Shown in pieces: positions 40,180 to 53,143 of a DNA stretch of 64,000 nucleotides (its first letter is position 1; each line of letters opens with the position of its first letter). Made by a program: the position numbers and the translations under genes. The notes under the pieces are model-generated. The model ran no database searches. It saw only the letters and a program-made list of their open reading frames with translations, and was not told where the DNA came from. This stretch comes from Podarcis filfolensis (Eukaryota), in the NCBI GenBank assembly GCA_964270895.1, contig OZ185441.1; one strand, 5' to 3'.

Positions 40180-40920
<741 letters not shown>

Positions 40921-41219
40921 CTGCCATCGCAAAGCATGCCTTTTATTTGTGAGGGCAAACTACTCCACATTTTAAAGTGAGTTTCTGGTATCTAAAAAAC
41001 ATGACATCCCAATGGCGCATTATGGGGTATGCCCTCCAGCTTATTCATAGCTTTCACCTCTGAAATTTAAAACCAGAGGCTGGGCTGCCACCTGTCAGGG
41101 GTGCTGGAGTCCTCTCTCCTGTATTGTGGGTTCTGCGTTGAGCACTACGTGACACCCAAGATCCCTTTCACCTCTTAAAATTCTATGAAACGTTCGTTTT
41201 GAATGAACATATAAGAACG

Positions 41220-41416
41220 GGTTACAGATAGGTAGCCGTGTTGGTCTGCCATAGTCAAAACAAAAAAATTTTTTTTTCTTTCCAGTAGCACCTTAAAGAC
41301 CAACTAAGTTAGTTCTTGGTATGAGCTTTCGTGTGCATGCACACGAAAGCTCATACCAAGAACTAACTTAGTTGGTCTTTAAGGTGCTACTGGAAAGAAA
41401 AATTTTTTTTTTGTTT
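41220..41416 (-). mobile_element. Fold-back Penelope-like terminal-repeat insertion; 12-bp TSD CATATAAGAACG (41208-41219 / 41417-41428); contains a 130-bp perfect palindrome at 41273-41402
   Basis: Base-by-base symmetry about 41337/41338; exact flanking direct repeat; near identity to the 52761-52979 copy. The Penelope assignment rests on the hammerhead-bearing repeat (inference from established knowledge). Confidence 0.85.
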
Positions 41417-42410
41417 CATATAAGAACGCATCCCCTTCTCTGCTCCCCCATAACCAATGCATTTTCATCTGTTGAGGCACTCCTCATATTCTGCATCACC
41501 GTGTTGTTCTTGACTCTGTGCACACACCATACTTTTAAGACTGTGCACGCACTATACCTTTTTTAAGTACTGTACATTTATCCCTCTGTTACAATTCCCA
41601 GCAACCCTTAACAAACTACAGTGCCCAGAATTCTCTGAGGGAATAATGTAGGGCATAGGGGCGTGTTCTTTAACTCTCATTTGCTTAGAAACAGAGCTTC
41701 TAGATTTCCCCTAATATAGTCAAGAGCAGAGAGAAAGTGAGTTCTTATATGTCTCTATATTGAGGAGAGATCTCGCCATTCTAGAAAGTGAAAGAACATC
41801 ACGCCTATATTCCAGGGTGCGGAATAAAAACATGCGCAAAGTACCCACAGAGTGGCCAGGCCAGACTCAACTGGGTCCGCCTAAAAAGTAGCGGGATGTT
41901 ATCGCCTTCGGTTTCCAACAACATTGCCTAGCTAGCCTTTGATTGTGCAGTTTGCACTCGCTCCGCGACGAAGTGATAGCAAAAACAACATGTTTTTCCG
42001 AGCATGCACAGAGCGCCCGCCCTTGGCCGCTGAGCAACCACGCGCAACTCTCAAAACACCTGACGTTAAAAGGATTTAAAGGAGGGTCGAGTAGGACTTA
42101 GCACCTTTCCTTTTCAGGAGACAAACCCCCCTTAAGGCGCTGTTCTACTGAGCTACAGGTTTTAGGCCGGGTTTCCGACAAGCACCAGGGGGAGCTGTTC
42201 GTGCGCAGCAGCCCCGTCCCCTCTCCGGCCGTTAGGCTGGCTCCTCCCCGAGAAGGCGGAGGGCTGGAGCGACTTCGGCGGAGCGGCGAGGCGAGGCGAC
42301 GGGAGGCGCTGCCGTAGCAGCTGTTTGACAACCCGCCGGCGGCTGGGCCTCTCCGGAGCGAGAGGTGCGTTTCGGGCGGGTTCCGAGCGGCTGCAGCTCC
42401 AAAGACCTCG

Positions 42411-42413
<3 letters not shown>

Positions 42414-42452
<39 letters not shown>
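42414..42452. repeat. (GA)19 microsatellite
   Basis: Read directly from the sequence. Confidence 0.98.
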
Positions 42453-42455
<3 letters not shown>

Positions 42456-42835
42456 CGCACCCGTCCGGTAACTTGGGTCGCTCTCTGGAGAGGGTTGGGA
42501 AGTGCGCGCAAAGAGCGCATCCCTCTTCCCTGGGGGTGGAATATTCGCCCGAAGTAGAGGAGGGTGAGGAAGGGGCGTCTTGGCGCGCGCGGGGTGCTGA
42601 GGGAAGTCCCCGCATGCATCCTTTAAGAGTTTGGGGGCAGTTTGGGGCTCTCCTCGAGGGGCTTCGCTCGGGTAGGGGGGAGTTTTTGTGCGCGCAAAAT
42701 CCTCTTTTTTTGGGTGGGGGGAATGTTGCACCTTGGAGTCTTATTCCTCGGACTGGGAGTTGCGCCTTTCTTTAGAGGAGCGCAGACTGCGCGGGTCCAG
42801 GAGTGCGGAGAGGCCCCGGGTTTTGTTGTAATCTG

Positions 42836-42848
42836 GTTGCCTAACAAC
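42836..42848. promoter_or_regulatory. RFX X-box-like motif GTTGCCTAACAAC
   Basis: One mismatch to the 13-bp X-box GTTGCCTAGCAAC. Confidence 0.5.
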
Positions 42849-45800
42849 GCCGTATAGCTTCTTAAAGCGACCGACGCCCTGGGCAGGCGTGGAAGCAACA
42901 GTTGCTCTTCTCTTCCGAGCCCACCCTTTCTTTCCTCAACCTCCCCTATCCTATGACTCCCTTTGCTGATGCCTGGAGATAGGGAAGGTTTCTGCTCTCG
43001 GGTATCTGTGGCGCCTTAAAACATTTCGCATGGATGTGAAGAAGGGCTTCAAAGACGAAAATATGTAAAGTTACCAGGCCATGAACGAGCAGCATCTGTT
43101 CAAGGGACTCTTCTTATGGACGGTCAAGACAGTTTTGTCATAAGCGTCTAGCTTTATGAATACCTCCCAAAATACATAAAATGTGATTGTAAGTATGTTT
43201 ACTCAGAAGCAAATGTGGCCGAGTGCAATGGTGCTTACTAATAAGTGTACAAGGGATTGTAACTTTAGTATTAAGGAATGGCTAGTGGTAGTGTGAAACG
43301 TCTCAAAAGCATTAAAGCCAACAAATAATATATCAGAAGGCCAGTGATCATTCCCACCATTTAGTGAATAGAAGTCTGTTTCATTTACAAACTGGTTTGC
43401 TAGTGAACCTGTTAGTCAGACTATTGCATATAGATTTCTTCAATGAGTGGTTTTGAAGCAATCTTGGTTCATTGTTATGGCCTGCAATAAATGTCTGTGA
43501 AAGGCTTCTTGGTCTTAGTAACAAATAGAGGTTTTTACCAAGTAAAAATTGAGGTTGGGATGCATTTCCAATATATTCAGCACCAGTCTAGAAACAGGTG
43601 GGCCACTTGTTGAGTGTGCAGTGCAGGCTTTATAAATTTTGCTGCAGAGGGCAAAAGACTGCACTGCTACTGCCTCAGTTGAATTCAGCAGGGCTGACTT
43701 ATGAGCTGCCATGATTAAAATTGCAGTTCTCTCTTACTAACACTTATTTACCTGGAAGTAAGCCCCATTGAATGCTTGCTTCTGAGTAGACATGACTCAG
43801 GGCAGAATATTTGCTGCCACCTGGGGCATATCCTCTAGCTCCAGCACTGCAGGTGTGTTAAATAACACTGGCATAGTTGGATCATTATCTTCTGAAGCCA
43901 CAGCTCCCTCTTTTCGTGATATCACTGCCAAAGCCAAAGGTCTAGTAAGTGAGGTTTTCCCTGTGGTGACATTGGTGGAACTAACTGTAGAAATCTCTTA
44001 AAGGATATCTGATTCCCACTGTCATTGACCATGCAGGCTGCTCTTTCAGTGACCTGACTGGACTGGTGAAAAAGCAGGTTGACCTTTTGTCACTAGCATG
44101 GTTTATTTAGTGCATTTTTACTCTGCTGTTCAGCCAAAAAGGCTTCCAGAGTAGCTTACATATTATCAATAAAAAATAAGTTTTGTAATCTAAAATACAT
44201 GACACAAAAATGAAAAAAGGATGGGGAGGAAAGAGGTGGGTAAAGCAAACTCAGACACCAAAGTTAAATAGCAGTTTTTATAGTAACCAGCTGGAATGAA
44301 AACAGTTCCAGGATAGGAGGAGCCTGACAGAACTGACCTTTCAGTAGAATGCTGATGGATTGGCCCTGCTTGACAACTGCTGCAACCTATTGGAGTGGTT
44401 GCTCTTTGGCAATCACCTCCACCTTGTTGTTGAGTCTGGTTTACATTAGGCAGGTGGTTGGTGAAGTTCAAGAGTAGATACTCAACTGGCACTGATGCTG
44501 AACAACTGAGCAGCAGGGGTTCTCTTCAAAGAACTTGACAGTGTTTGTGGTGATGAAAAGCTCTGCTGTTGCCATTTTTGTAACAGTACCATCTGACAAG
44601 GCATTTCTGGTAATTCCAGGCCATCTGTGTTTGAAGGTCAGGTTCTCTCTGTGGTTCACTATTACTTGCTTGCCATATACCGTACTTTGACAACAATGCT
44701 GGAGTTTCTTTTTGAAGTGCTGCACAAGAGGTTCCAATACGTATAACCATCATACTGCTGCAGGGAGGCAGGAGAGGAGTTCTGACCTTTCGTTGTAGAA
44801 TCTTTTCCCCCTGGGGGCTTTCAAGGGATACTGCTCATGAGGAAACTCTTACGCTATGCTTTAGCCAAACTTCTTCCTTTGCAGGGATTACAATTATTCT
44901 GTGAACCGCCCTGAGACCCCCCAGGTGTAGGGCGGTATATAATTAAATAAATAATAACTTGGTGTGAATACTAGGACCAAACTATAAGATTGGCTTTATG
45001 TATTGTCTGATGCTAATTGGCATTGAGATCTCAAATGGCTGCTTGGCTTGTGAGGGGAGAGTAACTGAAAATTTTGTCTCTCACTGATGAATTGGTAAAC
45101 TTTTGCTTACTTATTTACAGCATTTTTATACTGCACAGTAATAAGTTACCTGCATGGTAGACATTTTTTAGGATATAATATATAGACATATGAACTTAAC
45201 AAGTTAAAATAACTGCTGTTTTCTGTAGCACTTTGACCTGAACTTATGAATGTTTGATCCTGAACTGATGGACAGGTCTTCAGAGGCTGGTTCACAGCAG
45301 AAAATAGCAGGCAAAATAGGTCGGCTAATGTCAAGTGATTGACAAGTGAGTGGCCCCATGCACCTTTCAAACTTGTCCTGTGTAGGGAGATAACAATCTG
45401 TCCTACCAGTCCTGTTCTAAGGACGTGTATTTTATCAGCATGCAAACTAATGTGATTAAGGATTTAGAGGAGTCCAAAAGGGAACTTATTTTTAGCATTG
45501 ATTGTTCTGTATCAGGAGGATTGTAATTGAATTATCCTAGAATGCAATTATTATTATTATTATTTGAACTTCCTGCATATTGACTTCATGTGAGAGAGTA
45601 AGTGGTAAAGAAATAGTTATTATCTGTGGTACATATTCTGTGCACACTTTTTCATGTAGGAAAGCTATCACATGAGTAATCAAGTTAATATGTACATGTG
45701 GGTTGCTGTTTAATTAGTATTGTATATTTATGACAACAAACACTTCCATCAATTTAACAATATCCATTTTTTCAGGTGTGTTTGTTATTTCTTCTAAACC

Positions 45801-45870
45801 AATATGCTCATGATTCTGTGTAATCTCATGGAAGAGTTGGCCATTTTTACTGTTCAAAGCTACATATTAA

Positions 45871-45950
45871 GGCACTACCTTTATTAGGCCAACCATAATG
45901 TCACAAAAGTGTGTAAACTTTCAAGTTCCCCAGAATTCTTCCACTGGCTA
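45871..45950 (-). mobile_element. Degenerate Penelope-like terminal repeat with decayed hammerhead
   Basis: Minus strand reads ccagtgga-agaattc-tggg-gaactt-gaaa-gttt...ttggcctaataaagg: hammerhead layout with a mutated CUGAUGA core. Confidence 0.45.
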
Positions 45951-47151
45951 GATTATGAAAAAAAGGCAAGGGGGAGAGGGGGAAAGGCTGTTATTCAAGC
46001 CATCTTTGTCTGCACCTGATAGAGTCTTAAATGTGGGAGGAGGTAGCAGACATTCAAATGAGACCCTTTCAGGTGTTTTGCATGTATCAGGTTGCAACCC
46101 AAGCCTTCTGGGAAGGAGAAAAGACATAATGATTGAGTCTCCATTTCTGCAAATGCACAACCACCCCTTGCTGCTTAGTTTTGCCTCCATCCTTTGGTGA
46201 AAAACACAGGTTCCTTTGGTAGGTAGAGAATAATAATAAAAATGCAGTCATTATACAAAAATTGGTAGAGATAAAATATAGCTGCTGTGCTAGGTGAAAA
46301 AGTAAACAAAACCCAAATTGGGTAGCTTTACCCGGTGGCTGGAGGGAATTCTCCCTTTAATAATAAAATACCATCTCCAGGTGCTATAAAATCCTTTCCC
46401 TCTAGTTTAGGATTCTGGCTAAATTTGGGGTGTTTTCCATGTTACAAAAAACAAACAAACAAGCCAAGGTTAACTTGTGCCATAAAGAAAACTCCACAAT
46501 ATATATTAAGGCAATGCCTTTATTGAGCCAACCAAAATGTTATAAAGGCCTGTGGAATTATAAATCATGGTACAGATGGGAACGTGTAACTGCCAATTTT
46601 CACATGTAATTGTTGGAATAATTTGAACATCGTGAATTAGAAGCTTAATAATGACGCACGATGCTAGATGTGTATTGTTAAAAATAATTACTCTAGTGTG
46701 TGTGAAGGCAAGCAGAAGGAAGGGTTAGAAGCTAGTTGGTACCTCCATCAATGAGGGAAATAATGGTAAAGGATATCCCTGCACTTATACTGCCTCTGGA
46801 TTATAGTTTTGGAGTTCCTGGAAAAATGATTGTGCTGGGCTGCTGCTTGCCACACTTCAGTGTGGTTTTGTTTTAAACAATCTTGTTTGGGCAGGCCTCT
46901 TGTCAGCTTGTCCCGTTGACTATTCAGAAACCACATGTGTGGTTTTCTTGTGTTGTAAGACTACAGTAAGATCTTGAAAAGAATAGATAATAAAAGAGGT
47001 TGTATTTTTTTCCTGTCTCATTTGCACGTTTCTGATGATTTCTGAGTAATTCAAAGTTCTTAATAAAGTAGCTCTTAGAAAAATGAATTTCTGTTGTTGA
47101 AGGTTGCATCTGATGGATCAATAACCCTATATCACTTCCAAAATTGAAAAA

Positions 47152-47253
47152 ATGATGCCTGAGGACCTAGACCAGTTTCTTGAAGAACAAAAAGCAAAGC
47201 TGGCACAAGACAAAGCAAAGCTTGACAATGATCCACCTTACATGGAAATGCAG
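47152..47253 (+). CDS. CSPP1: CSPP1 first coding exon ([34 protein letters not shown]); exon starts at 47103
   Basis: aaaATGATG start, CAG|gtagga donor, acceptor ttgttgaag|G at 47102/47103. Confidence 0.9.
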
Positions 47254-47540
47254 GTAGGAAATTGATACTTTATTTTTTAAAAATGGATGAAGAATATTAT
47301 GACTGTTCTCCTGTATGTAAACAAGTCTGGAAGATAGTGTTTTCACCAGTGGCAATCCCTCTTTAGAAAATGCTAGGGAAATTCTGAAGTCCCTCTGTTG
47401 CATTGCAATGCAACCTACAAAGTAAAACAAGGTTGTCAAACCTCTGGCTCTCCAGATGTTATTGGACTTTGACTCCCATCAACCTCAGCTGGCATGGCCA
47501 ACAGTCTAGGGCCACAGGTGCCACACCCCTGAACTAAATA

Positions 47541-48039
47541 CAGTGGAACTTTGCTTCTCAAACACCTTGGTACTCAAACAACTTGAAACCCAAAAAATTC
47601 AAACCCTGAAGTAAGTGTTCCGGTTTGCAAAATTTTTTGAGAAGCTGAACGTGCTTCGTTTTGAGTGTTACGCTTCTGATTTGAGTGCCGCACTTCCGTT
47701 TTGAGTGTTATGCTGAGGTCTGTCTGTTTTTGATATTTATTTTGTGTTTTTGTTTTTGTGGCTTTTTTGTTTTGTTTTTGTGACTGTGTGGAACCCAGTT
47801 CAGCTACGGATTGATTGATTGATTGATTGTGTGACTGCAGTACAATGTTTATTGCTTTCATTTTATGGATCAATGGTCTTGTTAGATAGTAAAAATCATG
47901 CTAAAGTACTGTTTTAGGGGTTGTTTTTAAAAGTCTGGAACGGATTAATCGATTTTGCATTATTTTCTATGGGAAAGCGTGCCTTGGTTTTGGAATGGAC
48001 TTCCGGAACAGATTAAGTTTCAGAACTATGGTACTACTG
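47541..48039. mobile_element. Tigger/pogo-like MITE (about 500 bp, degenerate TIRs, TA TSD) in a CSPP1 intron
   Basis: ta|cagtggaactttg ... tatggtactactg|ta; internal segment shared with the 19924 element (ttccggaac..attaagtt). Confidence 0.7.
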
Positions 48040-48101
48040 TAAAGTTATTATAGTGACAGCATGTTAATTCTGTCTGCGTTACACTTTTTTTTCCTTTTCA
48101 G

Positions 48102-48198
48102 AACAAAAGTGCAGAGAAGCTTTCTGAGACCAGCAAAATGTTAATAGCCATGGCTAAAGAAAACATTCCACCAAATAGTCAACAGACTAGTATACACG
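48102..48198 (+). CDS. CSPP1: CSPP1 exon ([32 protein letters not shown])
   Basis: ttccttttcag|AAC, G|gtattt, 97 nt. Confidence 0.9.
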
Positions 48199-48665
48199 GT
48201 ATTTGCAATTTTTTTTAATTAAAAAAATGCTTATTGTATTACATTAAGAGAGAACATTACTGTATTTACTGTCACTTTATTTCCTAATGTAGTCCCACAC
48301 CTAACTACTCAAAGTCAAATATATATAAGTGGTGGTCCTTTCCACCAATGTGAAGCAGGGAAAGAGAACTATGCACATAGTACTATATACTCATAATAAG
48401 AAACCGCAACAGAGTTAATAATATCTTTTCTCGACACAGAGGGATTCCTGTGCAGCTGGGTTGTGTTTTTGGAGAGATACTGTTTCTGAGGCAATGTGGC
48501 TTTACTGATACTGTGCTATGAAGCACAGTTGCATTTAGTTGTAATGGCAGGTCTTTGGGTGTCCCTTGCATAGTCACGCTATGGCCTGCCTTCTTACCTT
48601 GGTTGCCATTGGTTGCAATAGCTGAGATTCCTTACTCAATGGATAAAATACAGTCTGAATATACC

Positions 48666-48898
48666 CTTAAAAGGTAAAGGGACCCCTGACCATTAGGTCC
48701 AGTCGTGGCCGACTCTGGGGCTGCAGCGCTCATCTCGCTTTATTGGCCAAGGGAGCCGGCGTACAGCTTCCGGGTCATGTGGGCAGCATGACTAAGCCAC
48801 TTCTGGTGAACCAGAGCAGTGCACGGAAATGCCGTTTACCTTCCTGCCGGAGTGGTACCTATTTATCTGTGGTTTAACCCACAGCGCCACCCGCGTCC
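48666..48898 (-). mobile_element. Sauria-type SINE with internal deletion; 11-bp TSD CTGAATATACC
   Basis: TSD at 48655-48665 and 48899-48909; both ends present, about 120-130 nt missing relative to the 54215 copy. Confidence 0.88.
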
Positions 48899-51800
48899 CT
48901 GAATATACCTCTGGCGTTCAGTAAATACTTAGAGGTACATACAAAGTAGAGCATATACAGCTTTTAATATCTTTGAAATGGCGTTGTTTTTATAGTCTTC
49001 TTTTGCAGCATTAAGTTATTTAAATTAGAAAGATTGTACTTTTCATTGGCATTGCCTCTTTCATGTGCATTACATTGCTTTCTTTAAAATATATAAATAT
49101 TCTAGCTGCCTATATTGCATTTCCCAGCCTCTGCATTTTCAGGTGTCTCTTTTTCTCAGTAGCTTACTGTCTGCTTGTTTTTCCTCTGCAATTTCCATCC
49201 TCATATGCACCAATTCCTTTTTCATTTTGGGCTTAGGGAGAGATACCTCCTACAGAGGGTTCTTGCAGCAAGTTTATCGTTGCTTAGCAACACCTTTCAT
49301 CTCTCTCAGTGTGTAGTTCTATGCTGCTTAAATTTAATTTATTCTCATACATGCTGTCATGCTGCTATTTTTTGTGGCTTCCATCAGTGATCAAGGTCCC
49401 CCCCCCCCAATCTTGGTAATGACATTTGAGCTTGCTATATAAATGTCCATGGAAATGGGTACTGATCTAATTAGAAACTGAAATCGCAGACCCTTTGTTT
49501 AGGTGAGGAAGGTAATGTTAAAGTAGACCTTTAGTTAAGTTCTGCGTTCATTCTTTCAGAAAGCAAAGTAAGAGCCATGTTGCTTCATATCAAAGCAATT
49601 GGGTTTTCAAATTCAGATAGTAGAAGTACCAGCACGCTAGCTGTGGAAAACATGTCCTGTCTGCAAGTTATAACAGCAGTAGTACCTTAGATCGATATTG
49701 AGGCTGGCATTATGCATTCTCTTTTGCTTGACAAGCCCTGTCACTCAAAAGGCAGACTGAAGCTCTTTAAACAAATGGTTAGGGGCTACTCAAGGACACG
49801 CAGTACCGGCATCTCTGTTTGTTGTTGCTAAAAATTGTGGCAGTTTCTGTACCAGCACTTCATGGTGTATACTAGCACCTATTTTTCTACAAAAAAAGCA
49901 CTGTAAACGGTACTTAGTAATTAACTTTAGGTCCCCTTAATCATATAGATAATATTTTGTTTAAAGTTTGCAGATAAAGCCCTACAGCTGATTACAACTG
50001 TGAGAATCCCCTTCTAAGTCCTTGGGCCTTGAAGCTGTCTCCACTGTTTATCCAAGACAAGGCTACAAGATGGTCTGATCAATGACATCTAATAGCTAGA
50101 TACGTAACTCGAATATGTGTGTCATGTAGCAAACCGGTAACATGAGCCACTGACACTTGGTGGCTAAAGATGTGGATTCGGCAGCTTTCTGTTCAAATAT
50201 TGATTCTAGCATGGACTTGCTTTGTGCGGTTTTTGGCAAGTCACTCTTTGGGTGCCAGTTCTTCATCTGACCAAATGAATAAGACACTGACCTATTTTGC
50301 AGGAATGTTTGGGCAAAACACAATATATTGTGTATGTTTGGAAGTTAAAAGTTACAGATAAAGGATACTTCTGCTACTAAGAAATTGAGAGACATTAACC
50401 CAGAGATATACATCTAGGATAAAAGTATCTCCACACTTGCTGAAAAGTGGCTACTATAAATACATGGAATTCTGTATTTAGACCATAGCAGACAATGTCC
50501 TTTCAGATGGAGAAATTAAGCTAAGGAACCTGCTTCCGGGTCTGCTCTGCCTTAATGGAGGCAGCCCCCACAACAGCGGGAGATTGTTGGCGAAGGAAAA
50601 AACCTAAGGATGATTGAGAGTAATCATCCTTGCAAATTTCCCCCAGGGATGGGGGAATGGGCTTCACTCACAGTTCATCTTGGTACCTGACTCTTGCTCT
50701 GGCATCGAATACAGGGGTCAGGAAGACGCTGAGTGCAAAAGTACTTCACCTGCCGAAAGCCACCACCGCCATTAAGAAGCAGAGGTTTTTCTGTTAACTA
50801 GAGCTTAATTGGAGCATGCTAAAAGAGATGAGATCACAAACTGCAGAACAAACCAACTGCAAGGACTTTAAGGTGCAAAAGACGGTGTAATTGAAAACTC
50901 ATAAAAATTTATTATTAATCTAAGGAACCAATTAATTATCCAATGGTTCCAACCAACACTACAATCTGATATCCATCCTGCCTTCCCTCTCTTGAAATGA
51001 GAGCCTTTAATATCAGCCAAAGAAAGTAGAAAGAGAGTTTTGCCAGAAAATGAAATCTTACATTAAATATTGACAATATTGACTGGTGGTAGGAGGGTTT
51101 GCTTGACCCATTTTCTTGCTGACACTCCCCACCCTCCTAAGTTGCTTTTCCTTCCTGCAGGAGAAAATCCTCTCTGCTGTAAAAAGGCTCCTTGGTTGAA
51201 GTAGAATGGTAATATCTTAGTTCCTCCAGCATTGTCATTTGTTATGATGAAATTCTTCTGCCACATAGCTGCATTTGCTATAAAAGCCAGAAAAGTTATC
51301 TTGCTGACTTCTTCCTGTCTGTAAAAATCTCCCAATGAGTCAGCCGTTTGGAATTAAATTTAGTGCAAGCTGGTCCTATTTTTCCACTTTTGAAAGACTA
51401 ATAGATTTTATGGGTAAGCTTAGAAGTCTGAGAAATAGCGCTTAATCTGGTGGTACACTTTTACTGTAAATGTTCAAGTTTAGACTTATGTGCCAATATG
51501 TTGACAGTAATCTGACAGTAGGTTAAATGACATCACTATAAATGACCTTAAAATAACAATTAAGTGTTGCTCACTCTCAGAGGCCACTGAGGAAACACCA
51601 TGACAGCACCAAAAAATGTATGTCTTCTGTATTTATTTTTTCATCTTTAAGCTGTTGTATGTTAGGATATAAGATACATTCTGGCTACAGCTGGTGGAAG
51701 TTTTAGTCCTAAAGTTCTGGAGGGCACCAGCTTGGGATGGCTGGATCAGACTAATGGTTGTCTAGCTCTGTGTTGTATTTTCTGTCAGTGGCCAGCTGGG

Positions 51801-52760
51801 TGCCTATGAGAATCTCACAAGCTGGACATGATGGTGATGTCCTTCTTCTGTTTGTTCTAGCAATTGGTATCTAATGATAAACCACCTCTGTCATTGGGAG
51901 TTCCATTTAGCGGATGTTAACACTTTTATGCCACACTTCAACAAACTATATTAGAGGGGGGAAAGCAATAGCATATTCTACTGACTAATGCAGGGCTTTA
52001 GCTGACAACGTAAACTAGGTACTACATGTGATGCTACTTACTAGTCAAGATTGTTCCCAGCTGCAGTTAGCTAAATATTTATTTTACAGTCTTGCCGTTG
52101 TACATATCTCTCTGCCTTTCTGTCAGCTGCAATGATGTTATAGGGTTAGCTTTGGTTGAAATAGTCCTATGATGTCACAAACAACAAACTTATGCAGAGG
52201 ATGTGGCCATTTTTGTTACACAGTATAATGTGCATTATGAGGTGCAAAAGTTAAATTGTTGTCATGTGCCCTCAGTTGCATAGTTTCCATGAACCAGAAT
52301 AGAGATTGGGAACTTTTTGGCCTTCCATATATTGCTGTCTCCAGCCACCATGGCTAACGGTCAAGAATTATGGGGGCTGTAGTCCAACAACATATGGAGG
52401 ACTATAGGATCTCCATCCCTGAACTCGAACTTTGTTTGAAAGTGTTTAAAATTATATATGTCTAAAGGTTTCATCCTTTGAAAATACTCCGCATATACCA
52501 GTGTTGAAACATGAACTAACTTTGAGACAACTACATAGTTCACTCTTTTGGAATTATCTCAGTGATTAGCTCAGCTAATTTTTTCTTTAAAGTAATACTG
52601 CTCTTTGGTTCCTTGGAATGTTATTGTAAGGTGTGTTTCTTTTAAATGGATACAGTTAGAGCGGCATACATTGATCTAATAAATTGTTTCATTCCGTTTG
52701 TAGATCATTTTCTTTCGAAATAGCGTATCAACCCTCACTTTCCTTCCAGATAAATATACT

Positions 52761-52979
52761 AAAAACAAAAAAAAAATATTTTCCTTCCAGTAGCACCTTA
52801 AAGACCAACTAAGTTAGTTCTTGGTATGAGCTTTCGTGTGCATGTATCTGAAGAAGTGTGCATGCACACGAAAGCTCATACTAAGAACTAACTTAGTTGG
52901 TCTTTAAGGTGTTACTGGAAGGAAAAAAATTTTTTTTGTTTTGACTATGGCAGACCAACACGGCTACCTATCTGTAACT
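52761..52979 (+). mobile_element. Fold-back Penelope-like terminal-repeat insertion; 13-bp TSD AGATAAATATACT (52748-52760 / 52980-52992)
   Basis: Inverted arms 52761-52844 and 52861-52942, a unique tail ending TATCTGTAAC, an exact TSD and an embedded hammerhead motif. Confidence 0.88.
52844..52881 (+). ncRNA. Minimal type I hammerhead ribozyme motif (Penelope-like-element type); predicted cleavage after C52877
   Basis: Stem I GUAU(52844-47)/AUAC(52878-81); core CUGAAGA (52848-54); stem II GUGUG/CACAC with CAUG loop; GAAA (52870-73); 1-bp stem III A-GC-U; CUC cleavage triplet. Confidence 0.8.
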
Positions 52980-53143
52980 AGATAAATATACTGTTCTGTT
53001 TCACTGTTTCTTAAAAATAAATAAATAGAAATTTACATAGTTTAATCCGAGGTAGCTTTAATCGCTCCTCTTTCACTGCTTTTTATAGCCAGCTTCCATT
53101 GCTTCACAACTCCGAGATTTCTTTAGTGACTTTGAAAGGGGAA

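What the first reader, a model, noticed from the sequence alone, without database searches (positions are those of the whole stretch)
41220..52979. Two independent insertions share one fold-back architecture: a possible non-autonomous hairpin-ribozyme retroelement
The 197-bp (41220-41416, minus) and 219-bp (52761-52979, plus) inserts have different TSDs (12 and 13 bp, both AT-rich) but the same end points. In both, the long arm ends at ...CGGCTACCTATCTGTAAC, the short inverted arm stops in the GTTTT just before GACTATGG, and the fold-back centres on hammerhead stem II. The long arms differ by only about 3 substitutions plus homopolymer length. Inverted terminal repeats and hammerheads are established for Penelope-like elements. 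Identical junctions in separate events suggest either a stereotyped priming and fold-back mechanism or a pre-formed ~200-nt hairpin unit mobilised in trans like a SINE or retrozyme.
Basis: partly seen in the sequence, partly recalled or inferred. Interest (0 to 1): 0.82.

Follow-up and report, generated by a model that had tools for sequence, protein, structure and literature searches.

The report
Head-to-head Penelope-element insertion stubs
The two ~200-bp hairpin-shaped inserts are real and independent, but they look like the already described "inverted repeat plus one-sided tail" scar that Penelope-like jumping genes leave when they insert, not a new kind of self-copying hairpin element.

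Summary
Two young inserts (41220-41416 minus strand, 52761-52979 plus strand) have exact AT-rich target-site duplications of 12 and 13 bp. Both have head-to-head inverted arms, the same long-arm end, and short-arm ends within 1-2 nt of each other.

[quoted passage not shown] For the Anolis element PAc, the tail lies between two internal start sites of reverse transcription, and the enzyme nicks and extends both target strands. In the copy that keeps the hammerhead core (copy 2), the 36-nt tail lies at +90 to +125 from that core; PAc's lies at +85 to +119.

I read both inserts as dead-on-arrival, extremely 5'-truncated PLE products, primed from both target strands and joined at or beside the palindromic hammerhead helix II.

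The "pre-formed hairpin ribozyme retroelement" reading is weak. Copy 1 has no hammerhead core at all. One diagnostic base variant is mirrored in both arms of each copy. The copies end at the start site, so by analogy with PAc they lack downstream template RNA.

One oddity remains: both short arms share a different A/T-tract state.

The scan has noted the same kind of insert many times elsewhere in this lizard genome. I could not run a genome-wide tabulation.

The parts
41220..41416 (-). Copy 1: a 197-bp head-to-head PLE insertion with no hammerhead core.
   Evidence: The 75-nt arms have no spacer, and there is no CTGANGA box on either strand.
41208..41219 (.). Target-site duplication of copy 1, 12 bp. 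The partner copy is at 41417-41428.
   Evidence: family D2, 100% identity; 33% GC.
41417..41428 (.). Target-site duplication of copy 1, second copy.
41338..41416 (-). Copy 1 short (antisense) arm. Its outer end lies in the GTTT next to the A/T tract, and it has no tail.
41220..41337 (-). Copy 1 long (sense) arm. It runs from the centre of helix II to GTAAC plus C, and includes the 36-nt tail at 41221-41256.
41273..41402 (.). 130-bp perfect spacer-less palindrome centred on the helix II palindrome GTGTGCATGCACAC.
   Evidence: (65-nt perfect arms).
52761..52979 (+). Copy 2: a 219-bp head-to-head PLE insertion.
   Evidence: As RNA the whole insert folds into a hairpin of -136 kcal/mol (z = -21).
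52748..52760 (.). Target-site duplication of copy 2, 13 bp. The partner copy is at 52980-52992.
   Evidence: family D2, 100% identity; 15% GC.
52980..52992 (.). Target-site duplication of copy 2, second copy.
52761..52844 (+). Copy 2 short (antisense) arm. Its inner end lies in the helix II loop (…GCATG), its outer end corresponds to the GTTTT run, and it has no tail.
52845..52979 (+). Copy 2 long (sense) arm. It starts 3 nt before the CTGAAGA box and ends at GTAAC plus T.
52844..52881 (+). Minimal type I hammerhead motif, mapped by hand. Helix I is GTAT/ATAC. The CTGAAGA box is at 52848-52854, followed by an unpaired A. Helix II is at 52856-52869, GAA at 52870-52872, and the palindromic AGCT standing in for helix III at 52873-52876. 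C17 is at 52877.
   Evidence: The architecture is as described for PLE min-HHRs (PMC4209133). Rfam does not detect it, and in the whole-insert fold it is buried in the hairpin.
52943..52978 (+). 36-nt 'tail', present on the long arm only. It lies at +90 to +125 from hammerhead A9, is 61% A+C, and contains an ATG that opens a frame (MADQHGYLSVT) running to the end of the insert.
   Evidence: For comparison, the PAc tail is at +85 to +119 with the hammerhead core at -6 to +1.

Best explanation
Both inserts are independent, dead-on-arrival insertion products of an endonuclease-containing Penelope-like element (PLE) family of this lacertid lizard. Only the last ~118-135 nt upstream of the reverse-transcription start are present, laid down head to head.

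**Proposed sequence of events**
1. The element's GIY-YIG endonuclease makes staggered nicks 12-13 bp apart in AT-rich DNA. This is shown by the target-site duplications.
2. Each 3'-OH primes reverse transcription on element RNA at one of two fixed internal start sites. One lies in the GUUUU run at about +86 to +89 from the hammerhead core. The other lies 36 nt downstream, at about +125/126. This is inferred by analogy with Anolis PAc, where both strands are nicked and extended and the two start sites bound the 'tail'.
3. That makes both outer ends stereotyped and leaves the 36-nt tail on one arm only.
4. The two converging cDNAs are joined near the hammerhead. Helix II is a 14-nt palindrome, so two antisense cDNAs are complementary to each other there. 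This gives the spacer-less palindrome of copy 1. Alternatively one cDNA runs on and jumps onto the end of the other, giving the copy 2 junction. This step is inferred.

The copies end at the start site, so they lack the downstream RNA needed to serve as templates again. The hammerhead is a passenger: it is absent from copy 1 and buried in the hairpin in copy 2.

My confidence is about 0.9 in the identity (a PLE insertion scar of a known type), about 0.55 in the two-strand priming mechanism, and 0.7 overall.
For: - **Independent insertions.** The TSDs are exact, AT-rich and of different length (12 and 13 bp).
- **Common long-arm end and near-common short-arm end**.
- **One-sided tail at a matching position.** The tail is 36 nt on one arm only, at +90 to +125 from hammerhead A9. 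In PAc it is about 34 nt at +85 to +119 with the core at -6 to +1. PAc shows two internal RT start sites bounding the tail, cleavage and extension of both strands, and AT-rich targets.
- **Published PLE architecture.** An inverted pLTR, a 31-bp tail on one of the inverted pLTRs, the inverted copy 37 bp shorter, a TSD, and palindromes at the inverted junction (PMC3846280). An inverted 5'-truncated copy and a 30-40 bp tail at one end (PMC8557442). Pairs of min-HHRs on opposite strands 100-700 bp apart (PMC4209133).
- **Hammerhead features.** The motif in copy 2 has the PLE min-HHR features: an unpaired base 5' of helix II, a 4-bp helix I, and a palindrome in place of helix III.
- **Mirrored variant.** The GGAA[A/G]G variant appears in both arms of each copy, as expected if both arms are made afresh from a linear template at each event.
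- **Different centres.** The two copies have different centre junctions.
- **Template requirement.** PAc template RNA must extend to +172 although RT starts at +111 to +118, so copies that end at the start site should be inert.
Against: - Only two copies could be examined. I recovered no full-length element, RT/GIY-YIG ORF, or further copies of this family, so the link to an autonomous PLE rests on architecture and literature.
- The tail-position match is to a different, non-homologous PLE family.
- Both short arms share an A/T-tract state (A5T10 and A4TAT10) that differs from both long arms (A9T7 and A7T8). Simple two-strand priming on identical RNAs does not predict this. It needs either slippage at initiation or a link between tract length and start-site choice.
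- Frangieh et al. saw no strand preference for either start site, so a tail on exactly one arm in both copies is not forced by the model. The chance is at most 0.25 for two out of two.
- The copy 2 junction shows no clear microhomology.
Confidence: 0.7

Rival explanations
1. Same PLE origin, but made from a single cDNA. The first-strand cDNA, primed at the distal start site, snaps back on the helix II palindrome, primes on itself and copies itself. The intermediate is then resolved about 36 nt short of the end. This is the self-priming model that Arkhipova et al. proposed in 2013.
For: Palindromes at inverted PLE junctions were interpreted as self-priming (PMC3846280). Copy 1 is a perfect spacer-less palindrome centred on the 14-nt helix II palindrome. 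An earlier scan note (s1-335256, not checked by me) describes an insertion in this genome that copied flanking DNA backwards, as run-through snap-back would.
Against: Snap-back gives no reason for the copied arm to stop at the same place, 36 nt short of the end, in both events, whereas a second RT start site does. The copy 2 junction has no terminal complementarity that could prime on itself. The arms differ in A/T-tract length within each copy, although one would be templated on the other.
Confidence: 0.2
2. A pre-formed ~200-nt hairpin unit is itself a non-autonomous retroelement, transcribed and mobilised in trans by a PLE in the manner of a SINE or retrozyme, so the architecture is inherited and not made at each insertion.
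For: Both short arms share an A/T-tract state distinct from both long arms, as inheritance from a hairpin master would give. The 22-nt centre difference lies between 9-nt direct repeats (GTGTGCATG), so one slippage deletion could turn a copy 2-type centre into a copy 1-type centre. Earlier scan notes list several fold-back inserts of 214-219 letters (not checked). PLE pLTRs can mobilise unrelated sequence in trans.
Against: - The GGAA[A/G]G variant is mirrored in both arms of each copy, which would need parallel changes in a hairpin master.
- Copy 1 has no hammerhead core, and copy 2 has one motif on one strand only, so no unit can be cut out by two ribozymes.
- There are no tandem units and no tRNA-like head.
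- The units end at the RT start site and lack the downstream RNA that PAc requires, to +172.
- Scan notes also list fold-back inserts of 184, 244, 262, 272, 578 and 732 letters, with hammerheads on neither, one or both strands (not checked). That fits variable truncation at each event.
Confidence: 0.07
3. A DNA-transposon MITE with terminal inverted repeats, or a palindrome made after insertion by local inverted duplication.
For: Long terminal inverted repeats and flanking direct repeats.
Against: TSD length varies (12 and 13 bp), and the ends are asymmetric, with a 36-nt tail on one side only. The inverted repeat runs the whole element and meets head to head. The content is a PLE hammerhead region. 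Two independent loci show the same architecture, which argues against local rearrangement.
Confidence: 0.02

Closest known systems
Head-to-head (inverted pLTR) insertions of endonuclease-containing Penelope-like elements with a one-sided 'tail' (Arkhipova et al. 2013, PMC3846280; Craig et al. 2021, PMC8557442)
   Same: A TSD of variable length, an inverted 5'-truncated copy abutting the sense copy, a palindrome at the inverted junction, and a 30-40 bp extension on one end only. The inverted copy is shorter by about the tail length (37 bp in Pen2a_Av, 36 nt here).
   Different: Here both arms are truncated so far that nothing but the last ~80-135 nt remains: no ORF and no pLTR body. The junction palindrome can be named as hammerhead helix II.
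PAc (Poseidon_Ac) of Anolis carolinensis, internal initiation of reverse transcription (Frangieh et al. 2024, PMC11167929)
   Same: The hammerhead core is followed ~85-90 nt later by the first insertion boundary and ~34-36 nt after that by the second. Targets are AT-rich. Both target strands can be used as primers. The hammerhead is not needed for insertion.
   Different: The sequence is unrelated in the tail (by eye against the consensus; not aligned with a tool). Helix II is shorter here. In PAc the ORF starts at hammerhead A9, whereas here the only frame open to the end starts at an ATG inside the tail. No protein of this family was available to test.
L1 twin priming (5'-inverted L1 insertions; from my own knowledge, Ostertag and Kazazian 2001)
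   Same: Both staggered 3' ends of the target prime cDNA synthesis, giving an inversion bounded by one TSD.
   Different: In L1 the second priming site is arbitrary and internal, so the product is inverted and deleted. Here both primings would start at defined sites near the same end of the RNA, giving a near-symmetric hairpin with stereotyped outer ends.
Metazoan non-LTR retrozymes (PMC7761336; bioRxiv 10.64898/2026.07.22.740005)
   Same: A short, non-coding sequence related to PLE pLTRs, carrying a type I hammerhead motif and dependent on PLE enzymes.
   Different: Retrozymes are direct tandem repeats with one hammerhead per unit, and they yield circular RNAs. Here there is no tandem and at most one motif, and the arms are inverted.

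Membership tests
Penelope-like element (EN+) insertion product | Flanked by a target-site duplication of variable length in AT-rich DNA | tested here: met
   TSDs are 12 bp (33% GC) and 13 bp (15% GC), both exact.
Penelope-like element (EN+) insertion product | 30-40 bp 'tail' extension present at one end only | tested here: met
   A 36-nt tail on the long arm only, in both copies.
Penelope-like element (EN+) insertion product | Adjacent inverted 5'-truncated copy, head to head, with a palindrome at the junction | tested here: met
   Arms of 75 and 82 nt. The junction lies in or beside the 14-nt helix II palindrome. Described.
Penelope-like element (EN+) insertion product | Minimal type I hammerhead motif (CUGANGA, unpaired base before helix II, GAA, palindromic or absent helix III, short helix I) | tested here: inconclusive
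   Present by hand mapping in copy 2 (52844-52881) and absent from copy 1. No Rfam hammerhead hit at gathering or at E up to 10. Cleavage was not tested.
Penelope-like element (EN+) insertion product | Belongs to a family with a full-length member encoding a telomerase-like RT and a GIY-YIG endonuclease | not testable with these tools
   There is no such ORF in the window (one search finds only the two copies). No access to the rest of the genome. Scans of other collections gave chance hits only. Scan note s1-318028 mentions a hammerhead next to a GIY-YIG fragment elsewhere; I did not check it.
Penelope-like element (EN+) insertion product | Insertion boundaries coincide with internal RT start sites at a fixed distance from the hammerhead core | tested here: met
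   Boundaries at +86-89 and +125/126 from A9, against +85 and +119 in PAc. This is a positional analogy only; start sites were not measured for this family.
Metazoan non-LTR retrozyme | Direct tandem repeats of ~150-300 bp, each with a hammerhead, so that a unit can be excised and circularised | tested here: not met
   No direct tandem. One motif in copy 2 and none in copy 1, with none on the opposite strands.
Metazoan non-LTR retrozyme | Unit-length circular RNA | not testable with these tools
SINE | Pol III-type head (tRNA, 5S or 7SL related) and a LINE-matched or A-rich 3' end | tested here: not met
   ARAGORN finds no tRNA-like sequence in 41000-53000. The Rfam gathering scan of the window found nothing. 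The 3' end is ...CTGTAAC with no A-tail.
MITE (DNA transposon derivative) | Fixed-length TSD and symmetric terminal inverted repeats | tested here: not met
   TSDs are 12 and 13 bp, and one end carries 36 extra nt.

The most novel reading that the evidence does not exclude
The ~200-bp head-to-head unit is a self-propagating non-autonomous retroelement. A transcribed hairpin copy would carry the PLE start-site region at its 3' end and be copied as a whole, so arm-specific features such as the short-arm A5T10-type tract are inherited. A milder variant: the hammerhead's helix II palindrome has a built-in DNA-level role as the annealing site that joins two convergent cDNAs during PLE integration.
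Probability: 0.08. Interest if true: 0.6.

Novelty: already known. Interest (0 to 1): 0.22.

Why it matters
As found, this is ordinary: two more copies of a very abundant lizard retroelement scar whose architecture is in the literature.

Its modest value is as a clean natural readout of PLE integration. Very short, young, TSD-bounded head-to-head copies expose both outer ends and the inner junction at base resolution. A genome-wide table from this lizard could therefore test in vivo three things:
- whether both target strands prime at the two start sites seen in vitro for Anolis PAc;
- whether the tail is obligatorily one-sided;
- whether the hammerhead helix II palindrome is the preferred joining point.

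The long perfect palindromes are also of practical interest. One lies between two divergent CpG-island promoters, and such sequences are potential fragile or dsRNA-forming sites.

Tried and rejected
- **Reads.** I therefore have no evidence on empty sites, other genomic copies or RNA ends. The listed runs were never laid, so I draw nothing from them. Shares of about 0.5 may only reflect the repeat itself.
- **More copies from public collections.** A 20-mer from the tail gave one hit in metagenome contigs (GC-rich sequence with no similarity beyond the 20-mer) and two in bacterial MAGs. The first is a chance match on inspection; the two MAG hits I judge chance matches from their source, without inspecting them. 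A 23-mer from the arm gave nothing in viral contigs.
- **More copies through small ORFs.** A word search with the 42-aa ORF that crosses the tail found no candidate.
- **Rfam.** No family reached gathering score in the whole window. At E up to 10, only hairpin look-alike microRNA models far below their thresholds matched copy 2, and no hammerhead model did. I reject the microRNA hits as generic long-hairpin matches.
- **Long-arm fold.** The long arm alone has no significant fold (z = 0.19), so I make no claim of a conserved stem-loop at the start site.
- **PAc alignment.** I did not align the PAc consensus to this element with a tool, because that would have meant typing a long sequence. The comparison is by position only.
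- **Autonomous partner.** I made no attempt to find it by protein search, for the same reason.

Full report
**What is there.**
- Read in the sense of the long arm, both inserts have the same layout: an antisense short arm, a centre, then a sense long arm.
- Copy 1 (41220-41416, minus strand, 197 bp) is flanked by an exact 12-bp repeat. Copy 2 (52761-52979, plus strand, 219 bp) is flanked by an exact 13-bp repeat. Both repeats are AT-rich, at 33% and 15% GC.
- The family's diagnostic 20- and 23-mers occur only in these two inserts in the 64-kb window, with none expected by chance. A sensitive BLAST of the long arm found no older fragments.
- These are therefore two separate, young insertion events of one repeat family. 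All CpGs are intact, and the long arms differ by three substitutions.

**Anatomy of the arms.** I aligned the four arms in sense orientation.
- Both long arms end at ...CTATCTGTAAC plus one variable base.
- Both short arms stop in the GTTTT run immediately before GACTATGG, within 1-2 nt of each other.
- The 36 nt from GACTATGG to GTAAC are thus present on one arm only.
- The centres differ. Copy 1 is a 130-bp perfect spacer-less palindrome whose axis is the middle of GTGTGCATGCACAC. In copy 2 the short arm ends at ...GCATG in that same palindrome, while the long arm starts about 20 nt further 5', at TAT-CTGAAGA.

**The hammerhead.**
- Copy 2 contains, at 52844-52881, a hand-mapped minimal type I hammerhead. 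It has a 4-bp helix I, a CTGAAGA box, one unpaired A, helix II, GAA, AGCT in place of helix III, and C17.
- Cervera and de la Peña described this design for PLE hammerheads: a short helix I, an unpaired base 5' of helix II, and helix III reduced to a palindrome that can only pair in a dimer.
- Rfam models do not detect it at gathering score or up to E = 10.
- In the RNA fold of the whole insert the motif is buried in a hairpin of -136 kcal/mol.
- Copy 1 has no CTGANGA box on either strand.
- The ribozyme is therefore not a constant part of the unit.

**Why the end points are the same.**
- Frangieh et al. (PMC11167929) purified the protein of the Anolis PLE PAc. They showed that it cuts AT-rich DNA on both strands and extends both strands.
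- They also showed that reverse transcription starts at two adjacent internal sites of the RNA. The ~34-nt stretch between those sites is the 'tail' seen in genomic copies, at about +85 to +119. The hammerhead core is at -6 to +1.
- In copy 2, counting from hammerhead A9 (52854) as +1, the short-arm end maps to +86 to +89 and the tail spans +90 to +125.
- The geometry matches to within 5-6 nt although the sequences are unrelated.
- Arkhipova et al. 2013 described for rotifer PLEs the same whole layout. [quoted passage not shown] A 31-bp tail sits on one of the inverted pLTRs, the inverted copy is 37 bp shorter, and inverted junctions consistently carry palindromes.
- Craig et al. 2021 give this as a general PLE feature.
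- Cervera and de la Peña 2014 noted pairs of min-HHRs on opposite strands 100-700 bp apart.
- The 'identical junctions in separate events' are thus the known PLE tail signature.

**Mechanism I favour.**
1. Staggered nicks 12-13 bp apart give two 3' ends.
2. Each end primes on element RNA, one at the proximal start site and one at the distal start site.
3. The two antisense cDNAs converge and are joined near the hammerhead. Helix II is a 14-nt palindrome, so the two cDNAs are complementary to each other exactly there. That explains a spacer-less palindrome with its axis in helix II (copy 1).
4. In copy 2 one cDNA ran through the hammerhead core and the join shows no clear microhomology, which looks more like a template jump.

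What is shown: the TSDs, the end points, the junction sequences, and the position match to PAc. What is inferred: the use of both strands and two start sites in this family, and the joining step.

The classical alternative is snap-back self-priming of one cDNA. It explains the palindromic centre equally well. It does not explain why the copied arm stops 36 nt short at the same place twice.

**Is it a hairpin element that propagates as such?**

Evidence against:
- The only substitution that distinguishes the two copies as lineages, GGAA[A/G]G, is mirrored in both arms of each copy. That is what fresh synthesis of both arms from a linear template predicts.
- Copy 1 lacks a ribozyme. There is no tandem arrangement and no second same-strand hammerhead, so the retrozyme criteria fail.
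- There is no tRNA-like head.
- PAc needs template RNA out to +172 while starting at +111 to +118. A copy that ends at the start site should therefore be inert.
- Earlier notes of this scan list fold-back Penelope inserts of 184 to 732 letters, with hammerheads on neither, one or both strands. I could not check them. They fit variable truncation.

Evidence for:
- Both short arms carry A5T10 or A4TAT10, where both long arms carry A9T7 or A7T8.
- The 22-nt difference between the centres lies between 9-nt direct repeats, so one slippage event could convert one form into the other.

I leave the tract asymmetry unexplained. Slippage at initiation beside the U-tract, or a link between U-tract length and choice of start site, are possible causes. 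I give the hairpin-master reading about 0.07-0.08.

**Limits.**
I have no reads-based evidence, and I sent those letters to no search tool afterwards.
- Public collections reachable here hold no lizard copies, and the ORF word search was blank.
- The autonomous partner was not found.
- I compared PAc by position only, because aligning it would have required typing a long sequence.

**Context.**
- Copy 1 lies in the ~1.3 kb between two CpG-rich stretches, at 40.0-40.8 kb and 42.0-42.8 kb.
- The first of these contains an ORF at 40343-40603, minus strand, that I recognise from memory as COPS5 exon 1.
I did not check that.

**Verdict.** The mechanism-type reading is supported and already published. 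The new-element reading is not supported. The scan has reported the same kind of insert many times on other DNA of this genome.

Noticed in passing
window 41273-41402: The 130-bp perfect palindrome of copy 1 lies between two CpG-rich stretches (40.0-40.8 kb and 42.0-42.8 kb). The first holds what looks like COPS5 exon 1 (ORF 40343-40603, minus strand). The palindrome therefore lies in a probable bidirectional promoter interval and could be a fragile or cruciform-forming site.
   Followed up: partly
window 41258-41284, 41393-41416, 52761-52782, 52920-52942: The A/T homopolymer tract is arm-specific. Short arms have A5T10 and A4TAT10; long arms have A9T7 and A7T8. Both independent inserts share this pattern, and the favoured model does not explain it.
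   Followed up: partly
window 52947-52979 and 41220-41252 (minus strand): An ATG inside the tail opens a frame (MADQHGYLSVT) that runs to the end of the insert, preceded by a stop. It may be the start of the family's ORF, as in rotifer PLEs where the pLTR plus tail encode the first ~22 residues.
   Followed up: no
window 52887 and 52912: Two C-to-T changes are private to the long arm of copy 2, while its own short arm keeps the C. They are either post-insertion mutations or copying errors, and are the only mismatches outside the A/T tract.
   Followed up: partly
window 42300-42420: A (GA/CT)n-like microsatellite, visible as SLSLSLSL and RERERERE runs in the ORF translations, lies inside the second CpG-rich stretch.
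   Followed up: no
window (whole): The window contains 190 N letters.
   Followed up: no
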